A DNA stretch of 63,673 nucleotides, the filler included, from Octopus bimaculoides (Eukaryota), in assembly GCF_001194135.2 (NCBI RefSeq). It is 7 parts of 7 records of this genome, joined end to end, with 100 filler letters (N's around TTAATTAATTAA, not from the genome) between each part and the next. Parts side by side here need not be neighbours in the genome. Positions count along the whole stretch, not along the records: positions 33,696 to 44,955 come from NC_069003.1; 6 more parts are not named here. One strand, written 5' to 3'. Shown piece after piece: positions 33,696 to 45,119 of this stretch; the first letter of the stretch is position 1, and every line of letters begins with the position of its first letter. The notes beneath the pieces are model-generated. The model searched no databases. It was not told the DNA's origin and saw only the letters and a list, made by a program, of their open reading frames with translations. The translations under genes and the position numbers were made by a program.

Positions 33696-33738
<43 letters not shown>

Positions 33739-34732
33739 TGCACACAAAGATACATACATATTAGGAACGACTGATGCCATCATGGAATCTGGATATTAAA
33801 TGATGTTCATATATATATATATATATATGTGTGTGCATATATACATTTTGTATATATATTTATACAGTTATGCATGTATACACGCACATACATATGTATG
33901 TGTGTATATTGAGAGAGTGAGAGAGAGATACATATATACATATATGGAATATGTAATAATAAGCCTGTTTTGACAGATAAATACTTGTCTTGTACATTAT
34001 TTATCATGTTATCTGTTTGTAAATAGTCGAGAAAATAAAAAAAAAATGGAGGGGAGGCAGGAAAAAAACCCCAAAACAAAGAAACAAATGTAAGGAAAAA
34101 AACAACGAAATATATATAAATTCAAAGCAAAAATGATTTTAAAAAATGATAGTGTGTTTTGGAGAACAAGTTCTTTGGCGGGGCTGATAAACATCAGAAA
34201 CGGATTTCTGTGTGGTCCAAAGAAGGAAGAAGGCTGATATTTTTTTCATTTGTGTATCTCACCAATGAGTATGAAGGACTGAGATGCACTACTGATAAAA
34301 TCCACTTACGATGAAACTTTCAAAATCCGACACAGTGGGAGGGTGGGCTCTGGCTATTTTGTTTATTGTTGTGCTTGCTTTTCAAGTAGGCAGGAAGTAG
34401 CTTAAGAATAAGGGGGAAGAAAAGAAAAAAAAACCAACAAAAAAACGGAAGAAAACCTCCAGGAAGGGTTAAGGATTATAGGAAAAAATTTAAATTGCTT
34501 GTAAATAACATAAATATTTGGAAGGTGTTTTTTTTTTCTTTTTTTATTTAGATGAAGGGAGATAGAATATTGGTTGTGGGGCTGGGCCGTTGTTGCTGAT
34601 AAATTAAGAAAGGAAAAGTGGGGTTTTTGTAAACACAGAAATTGCAGGACTGCTTTTAGGATTTTTGTTGGAAACAGTTATTTGTTTTCTGTAAATGGGA
34701 TTTTAGTTTTATTCATAAAATGGTGAACGCAG

Positions 34733-34910
34733 GCCAGGCCAGGCATGGCTGTGTGGTTGAGAAATTTGCTTTGCAGCCGGATGGTATCAGGCTTGATTTC
34801 ACTCTATGGCACCTTGGGCAAGAGTCTTCTTCTTCTTCTTCTGTGGTCCTGGGTCAACCAGTGTCTCATGATTGAATTTGATTCATAGAAACTGAAAGAA
34901 GTTCATCGCG
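34733..34910 (+). mobile_element. SINE family A 5' half, degraded
   Basis: GGCATGGCTGTGTGG head and GGCACCTTGGGCAAG block. Confidence 0.7.
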
Positions 34911-34959: not shown

Positions 34960-35126
34960 GAATTAATCAAGCATTGTCTCATATCTTTGAGATTTCAATG
35001 ATGTGGTTGTACATTTTTCAAATTACATTGTAAGATATGTGTGAGAGGCCTGATCTGGCCAGTTTGAACATAAAACAGGTAGAATATTTTGGCTGCATAT
35101 GGCCGGTTTAAATGCTAAAGGGTCAA
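34960..35126. mobile_element. piggyBac-like MITE fragment (second copy 37069-37280)
   Basis: End AATGCTAAAGGG-TCAA here and TTAA-CCCTTTAG at 37069; shared internal AAAACAGGTAG-ATATTTTGGCTG. Confidence 0.6.
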
Positions 35127-35230
35127 GATGTTTCTTGTACTTGTCATGCAAAATATCCTTTTTTTCTTTGTTCTTTTTTTTTGTATTTTTGTTTGTTTTG
35201 TTTTGTTACTTACTGTTCCACCTGGAATTA

Positions 35231-35267
35231 CACTAATTTAATTTTTTTTTTCTCATTTTAGGTAAGT
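35231..35267 (+). promoter_or_regulatory. Candidate recursive splice site (branch point, polypyrimidine tract, AG|GTAAGT)
   Basis: CACTAAT (35231-37), T-rich tract, TAG (35259-61) immediately followed by GTAAGT (35262-67); second donor GTG|GTAAGT at 35432. Confidence 0.6.
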
Positions 35268-36396
35268 TTACTTAAAGAGAACCAACCTTTTGAATTCCAC
35301 TTACTGTATCTGGTAAAAAAAACTGGGTGATGTATTCTGTTATAATTCAAATTTTGTACGGATCACCTACGCATACATACACAAATGCATGCACGCTAAC
35401 ATGTATCCAAATGCAAATGCACCCTGTGGTGGTAAGTTTTTTCCTGCTTTTATATTTTTTTTTGTGAAGTATTATATTATTTTTTAGTTTTCTGACCAGA
35501 GCTAATTACACATAATGCTATACGTTAGTATGTTGGTACAATACTGGGTACTTTGTCATGTATACATGAGCAGACTTGTGGTACCTCTGCTGGATCAACA
35601 GTCTAATGGTACCTAATGCTGGAACACTAGTCTTTTTTGTAAAAGAAGTGTCAAGTATTCATTTATTTGTGCTGTTGTTATTCGGCCTCAAGTCAGATGA
35701 CCAACAGCCTTCCAATTATGACCAGCCCTTCGTTTTGTATATCTGGTAGCTAATGCTACCAGTCATTGTATGATGACTGGAATAGCATAAGAGAGACAAT
35801 CTCTCTTGTCAACTCACAGCGCACTCTGTTCGGTTTCTGTGACCGAAGAGGAGATAACCATTCCGAAATGCTAGCATCTCACAGTCTGGATAGGTGGCAC
35901 TGCAAGCTGATTGAGATGTGATTACATCATTTGTCTACAGTGAGAGATTTTCTCCATGGCAAAACACAATAAATGGCTTCCTTACAGGTTTGAATGTGCC
36001 ACTGGCTTATTCAAACTGGTAATAACATTGTATCTTTAAACATCACTGCTTTGTGCGCCCACCCCAAAATTTGTCCACTGTATCTGTTGCTTTTCAAGAT
36101 AGATCGATCGATAGATAGATAATTTCTTTTTAAATGAAGGAAACGTTATGGACCCCAGATTAATGTAAGTTTTTTTTATACAAACTGCATCAAGAAGAGA
36201 AAGAAAGAGAGAGTGAGTGACAGAGAACAAGGGGAGAAAGAGGGTAAGACTGGATTGTCAAGGCTGGAACATTTTTGATCTTGTGTGTGTGTGTGTGTGT
36301 GTGTGTGTNNNNNNNNNNNNNNNNNNNNNNNNNNNNNNNNNNNNNNNNNNNNNNNNNNNNNNNNNNNNNNNNNNNNNNNNNNNNNNNNNNNNNNNN

Positions 36397-36705
36397 CTAT
36401 TATAACCTTGGGCTAACCAAAGCCTTGTAAGTAGATTTGGTAGACGGAAACTGAAAGAAGCCCATATATATATTTATGTATTTGTGTCTGTGTTTGTCCC
36501 CCCACCATTGCTTGACTGCCAATGTTGGCTTGTTTACATCCCTGTAACTTAGTGGTTTTGTTAAAAGAGACTGATAGAATAAGTACTTGGCTTACAAAGA
36601 GTAAGTCCTGTGGTCAATTTATTTAGCTAAAAATAACCCTTTATGGCGGTGCTCCAGCATGGCCACAGTCAAATGACGGAAACAAGTACAAGAATAAAAG
36701 AATAT
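36397..36705 (+). mobile_element. SINE family A, 5' end in gap
   Basis: Middle and tail match 1665-1980. Confidence 0.82.
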
Positions 36706-37280
36706 ATATATACTCAATCAGGGATGACCTGGGGGGAGGGGGAACTAAACTACAACAACGCCGCCACAGCCACCACCGCCAACAACATTTTGGAATCTTT
36801 GGAATTGACCAAAAATTACCGTCTACACTGAATAACACTTGGGCCCCTCCCCCATCATCATCATCATCATCATCACCGACAACACCAACACATTTCTGCA
36901 CTAAATACATCACATAACTTAGATAACAATCTACCCAAAGTTAGAATTTGTACAACTAAGCTATTTACATCTCAGCTGTTTTATATGTGTGCATACATGT
37001 GTGTGTGTGTGTGGGGGGGGGTATTTGTCTGTGTGCATACCAGACATTTTTTTTGCGATACAGAATGTTTAACCCTTTAGAATTCAGACTATCCTCCCGA
37101 ATGTAAAGCTTATCTATTCACACGATTTTAAATTAATCCAGCATTATTTCATGACTTTGAAATTCCAATGATGTGATGGTTTATTTATTAAAACTGTAGG
37201 GTAGCTATGAAAGACCATATATGACCAGTTCGAAGATAAAAACAGGTAGGATATTTTGGCTGGTTATAGCTGGTTGAAAC

Positions 37281-37530: not shown

Positions 37531-37591
37531 CTTCATGTAATTAAGTGGTTGTGGTCTACATATCTCATAAAGCATATGCATACACGCATAC

Positions 37592-38020
37592 ATTCCTTTA
37601 TTCCTGTATTTGCGTCAGTCATTTCACTGTGGCCATACTGGAGCACCAGCTTGAAGGGTTTTAATTGAACAAATCAACCCCAGGCCTTATATCTTAAGCC
37701 TAGTACTTATTCTATCGGGTACGTTTGCCGAACTACTAAGTTACTGGGATGTAAACACACCCACACCAGCAGTCAAACAGTAACGAGGGCCGGGGACAAA
37801 CATAGACACAAAGACACACACACACACACATAGATGTACACATATAAATATATATACAACGGGCTTCTTTCAGTTTCCATTTTACCAAATCCACTCACAC
37901 GGCTTTGATCGGCTTGAGGCTATAGTAGATGACACTTGCCCAAGATGCCACACAGTGGGACTGAACCCGGAACCATGTGGTTGGAAAGCAAGCTACCTAC
38001 CAGACAGCCACACCTGTGCC
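37592..38020 (-). mobile_element. Full-length SINE family A
   Basis: Reverse complement of head, core and tail; followed by an RTE-tail remnant (38033-38203) and another head (38203-38354). Confidence 0.87.
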
Positions 38021-38909
38021 TGTACATGTGTATCATCGTCATTTAATATCTGTTTTCTGTGCTGGTATGGGTTGGACAGTTTGACAGGGGCTGGTCTGCC
38101 AAAGAGTTGCCTAGGCCCCAGTTGTCTGTTTCAGCATAGTTTCTACAACTGGATGCCCTTCCCAATGCCAACCACTCCACAGAGTGTCCTGGGTGCTGTT
38201 TACAAGGCTTTACCAAATTCACTCACAAGGCTTTAGTCTACCTGGGTGGGTTATAATAGAAAACGGTTTCCCCCTGAGATGCTATACAGTGGGATCTGAA
38301 CCCAGATCCACGTGGTTGCAAAGCCAATTCCTTAACCACACAGCCACACTTGTGCCTATGATCTTCAGAAAGTCTACCAGATTGATTTCTTTTTTCCTTC
38401 TTCTTCTTCTTCTTCTTGTGTTCTTCATCATCTTTTTCCTTAGCTGTGACCTCCTTCTGCATATCATGAATTTTTCATAATGGCCAGACATCAACCCTGC
38501 CCCTTCCCTTTCTGTCAGTTTTATATAGTGCCATTACTTGCTTTACTCTCCTCCTCCTCCTCTTCCCCCTCCTTCCAGTATTTATTTTTTTGTTTCATTT
38601 TTGAAATTTCTACTAAACACTTTTTTTTTTGTTTTTTGTTTTTCTTTTTTGGTTTCTTGTTTTTGTTAGATCTTTCTTTAATTCTGTAAGGCTGTACGTT
38701 TTTCTTTTTTTATTTTTTGTTTGTATTTTTAAGTTCACGGTTTATGTGCAGAGTTTAAAGACTTTTCGTTTTTTTTTTTCATGTTTGTGTGTATGTATGT
38801 ATGTATGTATGTATGTATGTGTATGGGTGTTTTATGGGTTATAAGTTTGTGTACCTGTATGTGTTCGTGTATGTATGTGTTTGCATTTGTGTCTGTGTGT
38901 TAGTGTGAA

Positions 38910-38964
<55 letters not shown>

Positions 38965-39580
38965 TCATCATCATCATTTAATGTCCGTTTTATATATATA
39001 TATATATATATAATGCCAGTTTTTTGATGTGTGTGTTTGTGTGTGTATGTGTCTGTTGTATTTTTGAGTGCTTGTGTGAATGTATGCATGACTAAATGTC
39101 AGTGTGTATGCTTGCATGTGTATTTATGTATGTGTATGTGTATGTGTGTGCTTTTATGTGTTTACATCTGTATGATGATGTCTATGTTCATACATATACT
39201 TTAGTGTATATTTTAATGTGTGTATGTGTGCGTGTTTTTATATATGACCGCAGCCATATATATATATATGTGTGTGTGTGTGTATATACACACAGACACA
39301 CACAGAGTACAAAATGTTTAGCTCTTTTCAAGCAGGAAGGGTGAAGCCCACACTGTTTCAAGTGTCCTCTGAGACTAAAATGAGAGAAGAGGAAGGGCAG
39401 AACCCACGCCATATCTGCAAGCCCTCTGAGCTGGGTGTAAAACAGGATTTTAACTAGTTTAGGAAGAGCAAAGCCCACGCTGCTTAAACAGATCTTGCAG
39501 CTTAGAAAAAGTGTGAACCCCACACCATTCTATTACTGTTCTGAGAATGGTGGGAGTTTTAATGGAGGTTCTAATCAGAT

Positions 39581-40865
39581 GGTGAAGGTGCATGGCTCAG
39601 TGGTTAGAGCAGTGTTTCCCAACCATTTTACCCTTGTGTAACCCTTAAAATAATTACATGTCTCAAGGAACTCCTGCACAAAAAAAAAATTATATACCAT
39701 ATCTTTCTTATATTTTTTTTATTGTAGTTCACATGGTAAATATNNNNNNNNNNNNNNNNNNNNNNNNNNNNNNNNNNNNNNNNNNNNNNNNNNNNNNNNN
39801 NNNNNNNNNNNNNNNNNNNNNNNNNNNNNNNNNNNNNNNNNNNNNNNNNNNNNNNNNNNNNNNNNNNNNNNNNNNNNNNNNNNNNNNNNNNNNNNNNNNN
39901 NNNNNNNNNNNNNNNNNNNNNNNNNNNNNNNNNNNNNNNNNNNNNNNNNNNNNNNNNNNNNNNNNNNNNNNNNNNNNNNNNNNNNNNNNNNNNNNNNNNN
40001 NNNNNNNNNNNNNNNNNNNNNNNNNNNNNNNNNNNNNNNNNNNNNNNNNNNNNNNNNNNNNNNNNNNNNNNNNNNNNNNNNNNNNNNNNNNNNNNNNNNN
40101 NNNNNNNNNNNNNNNNNNNNNNNNNNNNNNNNNNNNNNNNNNNNNNNNNNNNNNNNNNNNNNNNNNNNNNNNNNNNNNNNNNNNNNNNNNNNNNNNNNNN
40201 NNNNNNNNNNNNNNNNNNNNNNNNNNNNNNNNNNNNNNNNNNNNNNNNTTCCTTGATTTGCATAATATTGAGGTCTCTTTCTTTCTTTTGTCCTTCCTGT
40301 CAAATATATATATATGTGTGTGTGTGTATGTAGGGTGTCCATAAATTACAGACATCACTAAATATATCTTCAATGGTTGTTATATTTTTTTGATAACATA
40401 ATAGGTTGGATTGGATGATGTCTATATTACAATAACCAACAATATGTTGTGCATGTATAGTAATATTACGATCATGAAATTAGCATTAGCCTATCTCACT
40501 CTTTCTCACGGAACCCCTAGGAACCTTTTGTGGAATCCTAGGGTTCCAGGGAATCCTGGTTGAGAGATGCTGGGTTAGAGCTTCAGGCTCACAATCATGA
40601 GGAAAATGAGTTCAATTCCCAGACTGGGCTGTGTGTTGTGTTCTTGAGTAAGACACTTTATTTCACGTTGCTCCAATTTATTCAGGTGTAGGAATGAGCT
40701 GCAGCATCCCTGGTGCCAAGCTGTATCAGCCCCTTTGCCTTTCGCTTGGATAACATCGATGGCATGGAGAGGAGGAGGCTGGTATGCATGGGCGACTGCA
40801 GGTCTTTCCACAAACAACCTTGCCTGGACTTGTGCCTTGTCGGGTAACTTTCTAAATTGCAACCC
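39581..40865 (+). mobile_element. tRNA-derived SINE (family C, Meta-like TTGAGTAAGACACTT block) split by a hAT insertion
   Basis: Head TGGCTCAGTGGTTAGAG continues after the insertion as CTTCAGGCTC...GAGTTCAATTCC. Confidence 0.72.
39610..40572. mobile_element. Non-autonomous hAT (Charlie-like) element with 8-bp TSD
   Basis: TIRs CAGTGTTTCCCAACC and GGTTGAGAGATGCTG; TSD GGTTAGAG at 39602-39609 and 40573-40580; contains an N gap. Confidence 0.85.
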
Positions 40866-41419
40866 CCTCAAAGTGGCGCCCAGGGCATGTCCCCTTCTTG
40901 CCCCACCCAAGCTACGCCCCTGCCTGCACCTAATGTACAGGCAGTATTTATAGGGATCAGCTCTCTCATAGATCTGAAACAAACACTATAATGTGGGTAC
41001 CAGTGTACTCCATCACCCCTTTCCTCCATAGCTTATGATACGCAATCAGTATTTCACAGATCAGGGGAAACCCCTCAGAGCTCACACGCAATCAGCACAG
41101 TGTTACTGCAGTTCTCAGAATCCTTCTTGCGTTGGTTGACTTAAATTTCTTGTTTATGAAAAGCAGAGTATTTTATTTTCGGATTTGCTGACAAGTCACT
41201 CTACATCTGAGCAAAATATGATCCTTCATTTCTTCATTCCGGAATAATTTTTAGAGGTTAATGTTTTTTATTTATTAATTTTTTTTTTTTTTCTTTCTGT
41301 TAAGAGCAAAAGGAAATGATACCAACTTGGTTGGTCTTTCTTCCCGATTGTAACTCATTCCATTTATAAATTTAGATATTTCTTTTATTTCATTTTGACA
41401 TCCCCACCCCACCACCATT

Positions 41420-41818: not shown

Positions 41819-42138
41819 GGCAGCAAGCAGGCAGTATCATGAGCATGCCAAACAAAATGATTAGAAGTGTTCTGTCCATCTTCATATTTTCAAGTTCTCC
41901 ATCCTGACTACAGCATCTCCCAGCAGGATAATGCTATCAATTGTATCTTCCCCCAAAGTGATTCATTCTTTATTTTACCAGCCTTGCAAAGACGAAAGGC
42001 AAAGTTTGTCCATAGCAGGATTAGAACTCAGAATCTCTAAATGTAAGAGTGTAGCTCTGCAAGGTTAAATTTGTTTTATTTGCTGCTCCACAAATTCTCT
42101 CCAATCCATCACACTACCCCTAGTAACCAAAACATCTT

Positions 42139-42181
<43 letters not shown>

Positions 42182-42703
42182 TCCTGTTATTGAAGAGGCA
42201 ACATTAGCTAATTAACTATATTAGCTCTCATTAAATTACTGGTGATTTTGTTAGGGTTTGCAGGGCCATAAAGCACCAGAGTTGAGTGAAGAATGAAGTG
42301 TGTTTTGCTGCCTCTTCTCATTCTGTTGACTGTTTCCATTTTTGATGAGAAAGAATGGGTTCTTTAACTGTTTATTGACAAGGACATTTGTGAAACGGGA
42401 GTCTACTGAGATGACAACAACGATGATAATGTTGTTAATAATAACCATAATAATAAGAAGAATAAGAAGAATAGCAATGATAATGATAAAAAATTAGTTC
42501 AAATTATACAACTATAGAAACTGGTTATATTTCATTTTCTGCCTATTTTCAAATTTACCATCTTTTTCTCTCTCTCTCTCTTCTTTCTCTTCCTTTCTCT
42601 CTCTGCCCTGTCCCCATCTCAAAACCTTAGAAAGAAAAAAGATATTACACAAATGCATACACAGACACACACATACACATGTTATTTCTTCATGATGAAA
42701 GAA

Positions 42704-42746
<43 letters not shown>

Positions 42747-42897
42747 AGAGAGAGATAGAGATGTGTATTTATGTATAGACATAGAAAGCTAGAGAAAAAG
42801 AAAGTGACAGATGTGTGTGTGTGTATACCATATATATAGTTATATATTAACATACACATTTATATATACACATCTGTACATACACATACATGTATGG

Positions 42898-42931
<34 letters not shown>

Positions 42932-43689
42932 GTATGTAATGTATATATGTATGAATGAGAGTTTGAGTTAGTGAAAGAAAGCTATTTTGTTCTGTTCCCC
43001 CCCTCTTCCGTCTCTTCCTCAGCAAAAGAAAATAATTAAATGAGTTATTTGCTTCTCAAACTATGTTTTGGTGTGAGTTGATAAAATCTTTAGATTGCAT
43101 TAGGAGGGCCCTGAGCAGCAAGAACAGCAGCAGCAAAGTTTCCTTTGCGAATCGGAACTTCAGTGGAAGAAACTCACTGGAAAAATAATAATACAATAGC
43201 TCATAATTTGATTTATATATAGAAATACGACCAGACAAGGGAACTTGTTCTCATTCACTTTGTATTCTAAACAATTTGGAATGTATTGTCATCTTTGATG
43301 TCAAAACATATTGTACGCACTGTTTTAACACAGCACTAAGATGTAACTTCCATTGGTTTGCATTTCTTCTGTGTTTGCTGCTAATTTATTAATGTACCGA
43401 CTGTATTTGTCTGCTGACCTGGAAACCTGTTGCATACACATCTGTGGTAGCCAGTTCCGATTTGTTTATGGCGAAACAAGGTCGAGGGTGAATTAAATTT
43501 AACAGACCAGAATATTTTCAGATTGTCAAAATACGGTTTACAGAGAATCATGACGAACTTGACCTCCGTCGTTTTTAAGTATTTGTTTTCAATTTGTACT
43601 GGAAATGAAAGTGATTCTATCCACCGGTCAGTGAGAATGGTAAATTGAATTACAGAATGTATGTATGACTACTGACCGAGACCTTTTGA

Positions 43690-44104
43690 AATGTGCTGTG
43701 CGTGAGAAGACCCGGCAAGTCAAGTGAGATCGTTGCCAGGGCCCCTGGACTGGCTCTTGTGCGGGTGGCACATAAGATGTACCATCCTCAGCGTGACTGT
43801 TGCCAGTACCGCCTGACTGGCTTTGTAGGGTTTTCGAGCGAGATCGTTGCCAATGCCCCTGGACTGGCTCTTGTGCGGGTGGCACATAAAAGACACCATT
43901 TCGAGCGTGGCCGTTTTCGTGCGGGTGACACGTAAAAGCACCCACTACACTCTCTGAGTGGTTGGCGTTAGGAAGGGCATCCAGCTGTAGAAACTCTGCC
44001 AAATCAGATTGGAGCCTGGTGTTGCCATCCGGTTTCACCAGTCCTCAGTCAAATCGTCCAACCCATGCCAGCATGGAAAGCGGACGTTAAACGATGATGA
44101 TGAT
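43690..44104 (+). mobile_element. Young RTE-tailed element (SINE or LINE 3' UTR) with a 114-bp internal duplication
   Basis: Ends CCAACCCATGCCAGCATGGAAAGCGGACGTTAAACGATGATGATGAT; GAGATCGTTGCC..CCCTGGACTGGCTCTTGTGCGGGTGGCACATAA occurs at 43726 and 43840. Confidence 0.75.
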
Positions 44105-45119
44105 GTAAATCAAGAAACTGTAATGAATATGTATAAGTTTAAAAAATTGCTGGCAATTTTACAGCTAACAATACCAGTGCAGATCTGTTGAAGAGATGAA
44201 TAGAGAAAATTGACTCAGTAAATGTCCTCTGCTGGGAATTAAAAGAAATTAGCTGTAAAAGTTACCAATTCTTTAGAAATAAGAGTAACCGGTGGGTCAG
44301 AGGTTCATATCTATGTCCTATTATTGTTGTATCACAGTGATTCTGAACAAGGTACTTCATTCTACCTACCTCATTTTATTGTCGTCCTACCAAACTCGCT
44401 AGTGCTGCTGTTACTATAAAATCCACCCATTAAATTGTGTGAAGTGGTTGGCGAATAAAGGTGGACAGTATAAGGAGAGAAAGGACTGTTTGGTCTTGCT
44501 TAGGACAAGGCAACCTCATTGGTGCTTGTGCCTTGAAAGATACAGTTGGTGGATTCTCTTGACCGTGGTTGGTATAGAAAACGGTAAACAGCTGTTCTAC
44601 ATAGGATCTAGAAATTTAAAAAAAAAAAACTACTTCATTCTTATGAAATGTATCCAGGGACTGTAAGAAAAGAGATTTAAATATGTCACTCAGATATAAT
44701 TTTAACATGTAACACTGCTTGGTTGTGTGGTCAAGAAGTTTGCTTCCCAATCTTGTAGTTATGGGTTCAGTCCCACTGTGCAGTGCTTTTTGGCATGTGT
44801 TTTCTACTATGACTATCTTTACTACCATCACTACCATCATCATCATCATCATCGTCATCGTCACTGTCATAATCATTAGTGCTGCCACCATCACCACCAC
44901 CATCACCGCCACCCTCATCATCATCATCATCATCATCGTTTAACGTCCGTTTTCCNNNNNNNNNNNNNNNNNNNNNNNNNNNNNNNNNNNNNNNNNNNNT
45001 TAATTAATTAANNNNNNNNNNNNNNNNNNNNNNNNNNNNNNNNNNNNNNNNNNNNAACCACTAGCTGGAATACACAGGTGCTTACAATTGTCAAGTATTA
45101 CCTCTAATTTTCAATTTAC

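What the first reader, a model, noticed from the sequence alone, without database searches (positions are those of the whole stretch)
35231..35437. Textbook recursive-splice (ratchet) site with a 170-nt RS-exon in the PDE4 intron
Seen: branch point CACTAAT, U-rich tract and UAG fused directly to a perfect GTAAGT, with a second G|GTAAGT donor 170 nt later (RS-exon 35262-35431, stops in all three frames). It lies about 17 kb upstream of UCR1 on the same strand. Established: AG|GT ratchet points remove long introns stepwise in Drosophila and vertebrates and are defined through a downstream RS-exon; from memory, human PDE4D is among the few reported recursive-splicing genes (Sibley et al. and Duff et al. 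2015; verify). Inference: recursive splicing in a cephalopod PDE4, conserved or convergent; I know of no report in molluscs. Inclusion of the RS-exon would be a poison or 5' UTR switch.
Basis: partly seen in the sequence, partly recalled or inferred. Interest (0 to 1): 0.85.

Follow-up and report, generated by a model that had tools for sequence, protein, structure and literature searches.

The report
Orphan recursive-splice-like motif in octopus DNA

Summary
CACTAAT lies at 35231-35237, followed by an 18-nt U-rich tract, TAG|GTAAGT at 35259-61|35262-67 and G|GTAAGT at 35431|35432-37. The interval is 170 nt with stops in all three frames. It is the best AG|GT site and the best exon-like unit in the piece. 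A composite this good is expected about 1e-4 times per 11-kb piece, but still tens of times per 2.7-Gb genome.

This piece contains no PDE4 coding sequence, no Pfam domain and no Rfam family. It holds only cephalopod SINEs, a MITE-like repeat, microsatellites and assembly gaps.

No cephalopod genome, transcript or orthologue could be reached, so host gene, strand, conservation and junction reads are all untested. In humans, motif-plus-conservation prediction gave 36,870 sites, of which 342 had junction reads.

My estimates:
- Fortuitous pseudo-exon: about 0.6.
- Genuine recursive site in an unidentified long intron: about 0.25.
- Ordinary non-coding exon: about 0.1.

Interest is low until the piece is placed on a chromosome assembly and checked against RNA-seq.

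The parts
35158..35259 (+). T-rich low-complexity tract that supplies the pyrimidine tract. The tract proper is 35242-35259, with 16/17 pyrimidines at -20..-4.
   Evidence: TRF 35159-35204. Similar T-rich tracts occur elsewhere in the piece: 38580-38780, 41265-41300 and 42138-42190.
35231..35237 (+). Branch-point-like CACTAAT, which fits yUnAy. The putative branch A is at 35236, 25 nt upstream of the acceptor, with no intervening AG.
   Evidence: motif only. No lariat data are available.
35260..35267 (+). AG|GTAAGT: an acceptor AG (35260-61) fused to a consensus donor (35262-67). This is the putative ratchet point.
   Evidence: unique in the window; best of 44 AGGT sites; donor rank 1 of 735, acceptor rank 4 of 571.
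35262..35431 (+). 170-nt exon-like interval (putative RS-exon). It is 36.5% GC, has stops in all three frames and a degenerate CA-rich 3' half.
   Evidence: None of its translations matches any protein among 5.8 billion clusters.
35431..35437 (+). Second donor G|GTAAGT (GTG|GTAAGT), which would define the 3' end of the exon-like interval.
   Evidence: and (donor rank 3 of 735).
35313..35318 (+). Weak alternative donor CTG|GTAAAA. It would give a 51-nt cryptic exon (35262-35312), close to the roughly 50-nt size typical of Drosophila RS-exons.
   Evidence: Read. I calculated about 4.3 bits by hand with the matrix. The size comparison comes from PMC8605326.
34961..35123 (+). MITE-like repeat copy immediately upstream. 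It is context only and does not overlap the site.
   Evidence: 75% identical to 37131-37279.

Best explanation
The most likely reading is a fortuitous pseudo-exon. One of the many T-rich low-complexity tracts of this repeat-rich, AT-rich octopus sequence happens to end in TAG next to a GTAAGT, and a second GGTAAGT lies 170 nt downstream. The unit looks exactly like a recursive splice site with an RS-exon, but nothing shows that it lies in a gene, and certainly not in PDE4. That link arose from joining unrelated assembly pieces. By inference, if the + strand is transcribed as part of a long intron, the spliceosome would probably recognise the unit. It would define 35262-35431 by exon definition, splice the upstream exon to 35262, and then choose between the regenerated GTAAGT donor (recursion, exon lost) and the 35432 donor (a 170-nt stop-laden exon included). 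That would be opportunistic use of a chance site, not an evolved element. The sequence anatomy is shown. The absence of any gene evidence in the piece is shown. Everything about usage is inferred.
For: There is no exon, domain or RNA family in the piece. The ORF lists show only repeat or low-complexity ORFs, Pfam gives nothing, and Rfam gives only sub-threshold microsatellite 'miRNA' hits. There are no tRNAs and no PDE4-like coding sequence. The piece is a mosaic of SINE copies, a MITE-like repeat, microsatellites and N gaps. The only protein matches are to a high-copy repeat at 43631-44044 that has been swept into 13 unrelated O. bimaculoides gene models. T-rich tracts are common on this strand: 4.8% of + strand positions have at least 14/17 pyrimidines, so the tract is explained by local composition. 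Chance still yields tens of such composites per 2.7-Gb genome. The semi-empirical figure is about 20-70; the Markov figure is about 0-15. The genome size comes from my own knowledge of Albertin et al. 2015. In humans, motif plus conservation gave 36,870 putative sites, of which only 342 had junction reads and 16 a saw-tooth pattern. Only nine fully suppressed intronic ratchet points are considered definitive in mammals. Motif-only prediction therefore has low yield in large genomes.
Against: The composite is rare. It is expected about 6e-5 to 3e-4 times per piece. It is the best acceptor-donor unit on either strand. It carries the features that distinguish true Drosophila ratchet points, namely a prominent pyrimidine tract and TT at -5/-6 (99.5% of ratchet points against 44% of ordinary introns). 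It also has a well-placed branch motif and a downstream donor. If cephalopods have several hundred ratchet points, as flies do (more than 500), true sites of this quality would be about as numerous as chance ones.
Confidence: 0.58

Rival explanations
1. This is a genuine, evolved recursive splice site (ratchet point) with a cryptic RS-exon, inside a long intron of an unidentified gene transcribed on the + strand. The unit 35262-35431 (or 35262-35312) is exon-defined and the upstream exon is ligated to 35262. The regenerated NNN|GTAAGT donor then outcompetes GTG|GTAAGT, so the RS-exon and the rest of the intron are removed in a second step.
For: All sequence-definable criteria are met: AG|GTAAGT, 16/17 pyrimidines, TT at -5/-6, a yUnAy branch motif 25 nt upstream, an AG-free zone and a strong downstream donor. 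The composite is about 1e-4 per piece by chance. Stop codons in every frame fit a cryptic exon that must be skipped, although this is also the default for 170 nt of AT-rich DNA.
Against: There is no evidence that the piece is genic, transcribed or in the right orientation. Base skews are small and heterogeneous. Conservation and junction reads are untestable here. At 170 nt the exon is much longer than the roughly 50-nt fly RS-exons. The two donors have identical intronic halves, so the advantage of the recursive donor depends on an unknown upstream exon. Motif-only prediction has low yield in vertebrate-sized genomes.
Confidence: 0.25
2. This is an ordinary expressed non-coding exon (a 5' UTR, lncRNA or poison-cassette exon) spanning 35262-35431. 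It happens to begin with GTAAGT, which would make it an 'expressed RS-exon' whose inclusion is the normal outcome.
For: A strong acceptor and a strong donor lie 170 nt apart, a typical internal-exon size. The exon is slightly more GC-rich (36.5%) than its flanks (28.5% upstream, 33.5% downstream). Mammals may have thousands of expressed RS-exons protected by the exon junction complex (PMC6224609, listed, abstract only).
Against: No annotated O. bimaculoides protein or any other database protein contains its translation. It has stops in all frames. Its 3' half is degenerate CA-rich microsatellite-like sequence. My rough count gives fewer than about 3 real exons genome-wide that would combine all these features by accident (inference).
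Confidence: 0.1
3. This is a transposon-derived motif. The 100-nt T-rich tract would be the antisense A-rich tail of a retroposon whose body extends rightwards. The acceptor-like site would then be a by-product carried by a whole repeat family, as with antisense Alu exonisation in primates.
For: On the minus strand, 35260-35140 reads as an A-rich, AAAC-type tail. The site lies between a MITE-like repeat (34961-35123) and sequence with a weak match to a repeat-laden gene model (P0008 residues 193-227 against 35934-35830, 49% identity). Most of the piece is transposon sequence.
Against: There is no second copy of 35124-36308 in the piece. No target-site duplication was found. The high-copy repeat at 43631-44044 recovered 13 octopus gene models, whereas ORFs from 35112-35934 recovered none. 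That argues against a very high-copy family, though only weakly.
Confidence: 0.07

Closest known systems
Drosophila intronic ratchet points with cryptic RS-exons (Ubx, kuz, Bx; Burnette 2005, Duff 2015, Joseph 2018, Pai 2018)
   Same: It has a juxtaposed acceptor and consensus donor (Y-tract, AG|GTAAGT), a prominent pyrimidine tract with TT at -5/-6, a branch motif 20-50 nt upstream and a downstream donor defining a non-coding cryptic exon.
   Different: Fly RS-exons are about 50 nt long, whereas this one is 170 nt (a weak donor would give 51 nt). Fly sites are ultraconserved, lie in introns mostly longer than 40 kb, and are supported by junction reads, lariats and a saw-tooth pattern. None of that is known here.
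Vertebrate recursive splice sites with RS-exons (Sibley 2015; human PDE4D RS1-RS3, CADM1, ANK3, MAGI1)
   Same: The RS-exon architecture is the same, with competition between the regenerated donor and the RS-exon donor. The exon length falls in the vertebrate range. Human PDE4D is indeed recursively spliced.
   Different: No PDE4 sequence is contiguous with this site (and the program note). Human sites are defined by conservation (PhastCons >= 0.5) and junction reads. Here there is only the motif.
Intronic or intergenic pseudo-exons (for example DMD pseudo-exons, PMC7175933, listed)
   Same: It is a good acceptor and a good donor at exon-like spacing in non-coding, repeat-rich DNA with no coding capacity. 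Three weaker such pairs occur in the same 11 kb.
   Different: This one is unusually perfect and begins with a full donor consensus, which ordinary pseudo-exons do not need.
Antisense-retroposon (Alu-type) exonisation (recalled from memory: Lev-Maor 2003, Sorek 2002)
   Same: A long poly-U tract, possibly an antisense A-rich tail, creates a strong acceptor next to an AG.
   Different: No repeat family membership could be shown for 35124-36308.

Membership tests
Recursive splice site / ratchet point with RS-exon | Juxtaposed 3' splice site AG and 5' splice site GT (AG|GTRAGT) | tested here: met
   AG|GTAAGT lies at 35260-35267 and is unique in the window.
Recursive splice site / ratchet point with RS-exon | A strong acceptor: a prominent pyrimidine tract, with TT at -5/-6 in flies | tested here: met
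   There are 16/17 pyrimidines at -20..-4 and T at -5 and -6. It is the best of 44 AGGT sites and the acceptor ranks 4 of 571.
Recursive splice site / ratchet point with RS-exon | A branch point 20-50 nt upstream that is used in lariats | tested here: inconclusive
   The CACTAAT motif is present 25 nt upstream with an AG-free zone. Lariat use cannot be tested.
Recursive splice site / ratchet point with RS-exon | A downstream 5' splice site defining a cryptic RS-exon | tested here: met
   GTG|GTAAGT at 35432 gives a 170-nt exon, and a weak CTG|GTAAAA at 35313 gives a 51-nt exon. This is met at motif level only.
Recursive splice site / ratchet point with RS-exon | Location in a long intron, on the sense strand of an expressed gene | not testable with these tools
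   The piece contains no exon. No octopus genome or annotation could be reached. Strand skews are uninformative.
Recursive splice site / ratchet point with RS-exon | Evolutionary conservation of the AG|GT core relative to its flanks | not testable with these tools
   No orthologous cephalopod DNA was retrievable.
Recursive splice site / ratchet point with RS-exon | Splicing intermediates: upstream-exon-to-RS junction reads, RS lariats and saw-tooth coverage | not testable with these tools
   No RNA-seq access.
PDE4 (cAMP phosphodiesterase 4) locus | PDE4 exons (UCR1, UCR2, catalytic) contiguous with the site on the same strand | tested here: not met
A tblastn search with a human PDE4D UCR1-to-catalytic sequence, recalled from memory, gives only noise (best E 0.55 over 14 aa). 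There is no Pfam PDEase or UCR hit in the 10 longest ORFs. Intron membership itself is not excluded.

The most novel reading that the evidence does not exclude
The site is a genuine, evolved ratchet point with a cryptic RS-exon in a long intron of an octopus gene. That would be the first recursive splice site described in a mollusc or lophotrochozoan, and it would suggest that exon-defined recursive splicing dates back to the bilaterian ancestor. In the held literature, no paper joins recursive splicing with octopus, and the three that mention it alongside cephalopods or molluscs contain each term only once.
Probability: 0.25. Interest if true: 0.5.

Novelty: not a real feature. Interest (0 to 1): 0.2.

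Why it matters
If it were real, it would extend recursive splicing from flies and vertebrates (fruit flies, mice, humans and lungfish) to a third major animal lineage with very long introns. It would also give a concrete site on which to test whether the RS-exon mechanism is ancestral. As it stands, the value of this check is negative. The attractive parallel with human PDE4D came from concatenating unrelated assembly pieces. A motif alone, however perfect, does not establish recursive splicing in a 2.7-Gb repeat-rich genome, where tens of equally good sites are expected by chance.

Tried and rejected
1. **Orthologous or transcript sequence through proteins.** A chimeric query of all ORF segments from 35112-35934, both strands, against 5.8 billion proteins gave no hit. 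A second query with the other ORFs of the piece hit only O. bimaculoides gene models through one high-copy repeat. The database therefore holds annotated octopus proteins but no ORFs from octopus non-coding DNA.

2. **Octopus genomic DNA for an empirical background and a repeat check.** The look-up of encoding contigs failed for a window ORF and for two octopus proteins. Metagenome scans for the junction 24-mer and for the SINE core 25-mer found nothing.

3. **Repeat membership of the site.** There is no second copy in the piece, and no target-site duplication or tandem structure.

4. **Other explanations for the locus.**
   - No Rfam family reaches its gathering score; all hits are microsatellite-driven miRNA models.
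   - There are no tRNAs and no Pfam domains.
   - The reverse complement ACTTACCT resembles the U1 snRNA 5' end, but Rfam finds no U1 match, so it is not a U1 gene or pseudogene.

5. **Transcription-strand inference from T/A and G/C skews.** The skews are small and change sign from one kb to the next, so they are uninformative.

6. **Third protein search for octopus PDE4.** The protein could not have been placed relative to this piece, and a tblastn search with human PDE4D was already negative.

Full report
**What is in the sequence**

- CACTAAT occupies 35231-35237. It fits the metazoan yUnAy branch consensus, and the putative branch A at 35236 lies 25 nt before the acceptor.
- There is no AG between the branch and the acceptor.
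- Positions 35242-35259 are 17 pyrimidines and one A, giving 16/17 pyrimidines at -20..-4, with T at -5 and -6.
- TAG (35259-35261) abuts GTAAGT (35262-35267).
- A second donor, GTG|GTAAGT, has its exon-side G at 35431.
- The interval 35262-35431 is 170 nt, 36.5% GC, with stops in all three frames.
- A weak third donor, CTG|GTAAAA at 35313, would give a 51-nt unit.

**Is it more than chance?**

Taken singly, the motifs are unremarkable.

- AGGTAAGT occurs once, against 0.34 expected; 29 of 100 shuffles have at least one.
- GGTAAGT occurs twice, against 1.38 expected.
- GTAAGT occurs 5 and 3 times on the two strands. My base-composition estimate is about 3.6 per strand.

The combination is unusual.

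- Of 44 AGGT sites on both strands, this is far the best on pyrimidine tract plus donor.
- I scored splice sites with approximate position weight matrices recalled from memory, not MaxEntScan. On those, the two donors rank 1 and 3 of 735 and the acceptor 4 of 571 on the + strand. The pair is the strongest of only four exon-like units in the piece.
- I simulated 360 Mb of 4th-order Markov sequence, trained on the piece with the site removed. AGGTAAGT with a 14/17 or better tract occurs 2e-3 times per piece. With a strong donor 30-300 nt downstream it occurs 6e-5 times or fewer, about 0-15 per 2.7 Gb.
- T-rich tracts are commoner in the real sequence than in the model: 3-5% of positions have at least 14/17 pyrimidines. 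The semi-empirical estimate is therefore higher, about 3e-4 per piece and 20-70 per genome.

The unit is thus improbable at any given place. It is nonetheless expected tens of times in an octopus-sized genome, and the p-values are post hoc.

**What surrounds it**

The piece is non-coding, repeat-rich cephalopod DNA with two assembly gaps (36309-36396 and 39744-40248).

- tRNA-derived SINE copies lie at about 34735-34905 (+), 36397-36707 (+, cut by the gap), 37588-38022 (-), 38277-38346 (-) and about 44706 onwards (+).
- A MITE-like repeat lies at 34961-35112, with a second copy at 37131-37279. It ends about 100 nt before the site.
- Another repeat at 43631-44105 has a partial inverted copy at 38032-38203.
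- Many microsatellites are present.
- No ORF has a Pfam domain, no Rfam family reaches its gathering score and there is no tRNA.
- The only protein-database matches are 13 Octopus bimaculoides gene models of unrelated families, all through the 43631-44044 repeat. This identifies the organism but not a gene at this locus.
- The site itself (35124-36308) has no second copy in the piece.

**The PDE4 premise**

That exon lies beyond 44955, and the scan program states that the window was joined from unrelated short pieces.

Inside the piece, a tblastn search with a human PDE4D UCR1-to-catalytic sequence (recalled from memory) gives only noise, with a best E-value of 0.55 over 14 residues. The recollection about human PDE4D is right: three recursive sites, two of them from Sibley et al. 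(PMC6110456). With no demonstrated link between this piece and PDE4, however, the 'conserved or convergent' inference falls.

**Could function be tested?**

It could not be tested with the collections available.

- ORF-based searches around the site found nothing.
- Exact-protein look-ups for a window ORF and for octopus proteins found no contigs.
- Metagenome scans for the junction 24-mer and for the octopus SINE core found no octopus DNA.
- Strand skews that might hint at transcription direction are small and inconsistent.

Host gene, strand, intron length, conservation and junction reads are the criteria that actually define recursive sites. All of them remain open.

**Weighing the readings**

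What separates true ratchet points from look-alikes in the literature is conservation and splicing intermediates.

- In human cells, AGGT plus a strong acceptor plus PhastCons >= 0.5 gave 36,870 putative sites. Of these, 342 had junction reads and 16 a saw-tooth pattern.
- Mammals have nine definitive, fully suppressed intronic ratchet points, while flies have more than 500.

I compared rough genome-wide counts for a composite as strict as this one. These are inference, not computed results.

- Chance gives about 5-70 sites.
- True ratchet points give about 0.03 x N. That is about 1-13 for N between 30 and 500.
- Ordinary expressed exons that happen to start with GTAAGT give fewer than about 3.

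This puts a fortuitous pseudo-exon near 0.6, which includes a transposon-derived origin at about 0.07. A genuine recursive site comes out near 0.25 and an ordinary non-coding exon near 0.1. The main uncertainty is how many ratchet points cephalopods have, which nobody has measured. In the held literature, no paper joins recursive splicing with octopus. The one paper that holds 'cephalopod' and the two that hold 'mollus*' alongside it contain each term only once.

**How it would work if transcribed**

This is inference from the fly and vertebrate models.

1. U2AF and U2 bind the long U-tract and the 35236 branch, and U1 binds the 35432 donor. Together they define 35262-35431 as an exon.
2. The upstream exon is ligated to 35262, which regenerates NNN|GTAAGT.
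3. That donor then competes with GTG|GTAAGT. The intronic halves of the two donors are identical, so the last three bases of the unknown upstream exon decide the outcome.
4. An upstream exon ending in AG would favour recursion and loss of the RS-exon. Otherwise a 170-nt exon with stops in every frame would be included.

**Verdict**

The PDE4 attribution is an artefact of concatenation. The recursive-splicing reading is a legitimate but untested candidate that meets every sequence criterion and none of the functional ones. Interest is low until the piece is placed on a chromosome assembly and checked against RNA-seq and sister-species genomes.

Noticed in passing
43631-44105 (-); partial inverted copy 38032-38203; fragments 38963-38991 and 44925-44955: A high-copy octopus repeat with an internal 82-nt direct duplication (43720-43801 against 43834-43915, 83% identical). 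Its translation matches 13 O. bimaculoides predicted proteins of unrelated families, including RWD, kinases, THOC5, GALNT, RB-like, PARN, TBC1D15 and VPS41. Several of them match a segment at 100% identity. This points either to widespread exonisation of the repeat or to repeat contamination of the gene models.
   Followed up: partly
34961-35123 and 37060-37279: Two copies, 75% identical, of a short MITE-like element. Copy B begins GTTTAACCCTTTAGAATTC and copy A ends GCTAAAGGGTCAAG. These could be terminal inverted repeats, reminiscent from memory of the piggyBac TTAA/CCCT ends. I did not verify this against any repeat library.
   Followed up: partly
36397-36707 (+) and 37588-37928 (-): Two copies of a longer SINE-like element in inverted orientation, about 880 nt apart and 70% identical over about 350 nt. 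The first copy is truncated by the N gap at 36309-36396. On a transcript they could form a long hairpin, the kind of substrate associated with heavy A-to-I editing in cephalopods (from my own knowledge).
   Followed up: no
39585-39640 and 40500-40700: tRNA-like SINE head sequences (GGTGCATGGCTCAGTGGTTAGAGC... and ...GAGTTCAATTCCCAG...) on either side of the 505-nt N gap at 39744-40248. They resemble the cephalopod 'Ceph-SINE' type (from memory). ARAGORN calls no tRNA here.
   Followed up: no
33696-33960, 38800-39320 and 42640-42950: All Rfam matches with E <= 1 fall far below their gathering scores. Nearly all are miRNA models (mir-297, mir-466, mir-3149 and others) landing on (TA)n/(TG)n microsatellites, and the remaining few (sno_ZL1, SCARNA7, CrcZ) are weak noise. 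I read them all as false positives.
   Followed up: yes
35432-35487: Right after the second donor there is another T-rich tract ending in TTTTTTAG (35480-35487). GTAAGT...TTTTTTAG therefore forms a 56-nt mini-intron-like unit. In sequence this AT-rich and low in complexity, this is probably another chance pattern.
   Followed up: no
35579-35633: A 29-nt tandem duplication (TGGTACCT.TGCTGGA.CA.CAGTCTAA, 1.9 copies, 81% matches) lies 150 nt downstream of the second donor. Its significance is unknown.
   Followed up: no
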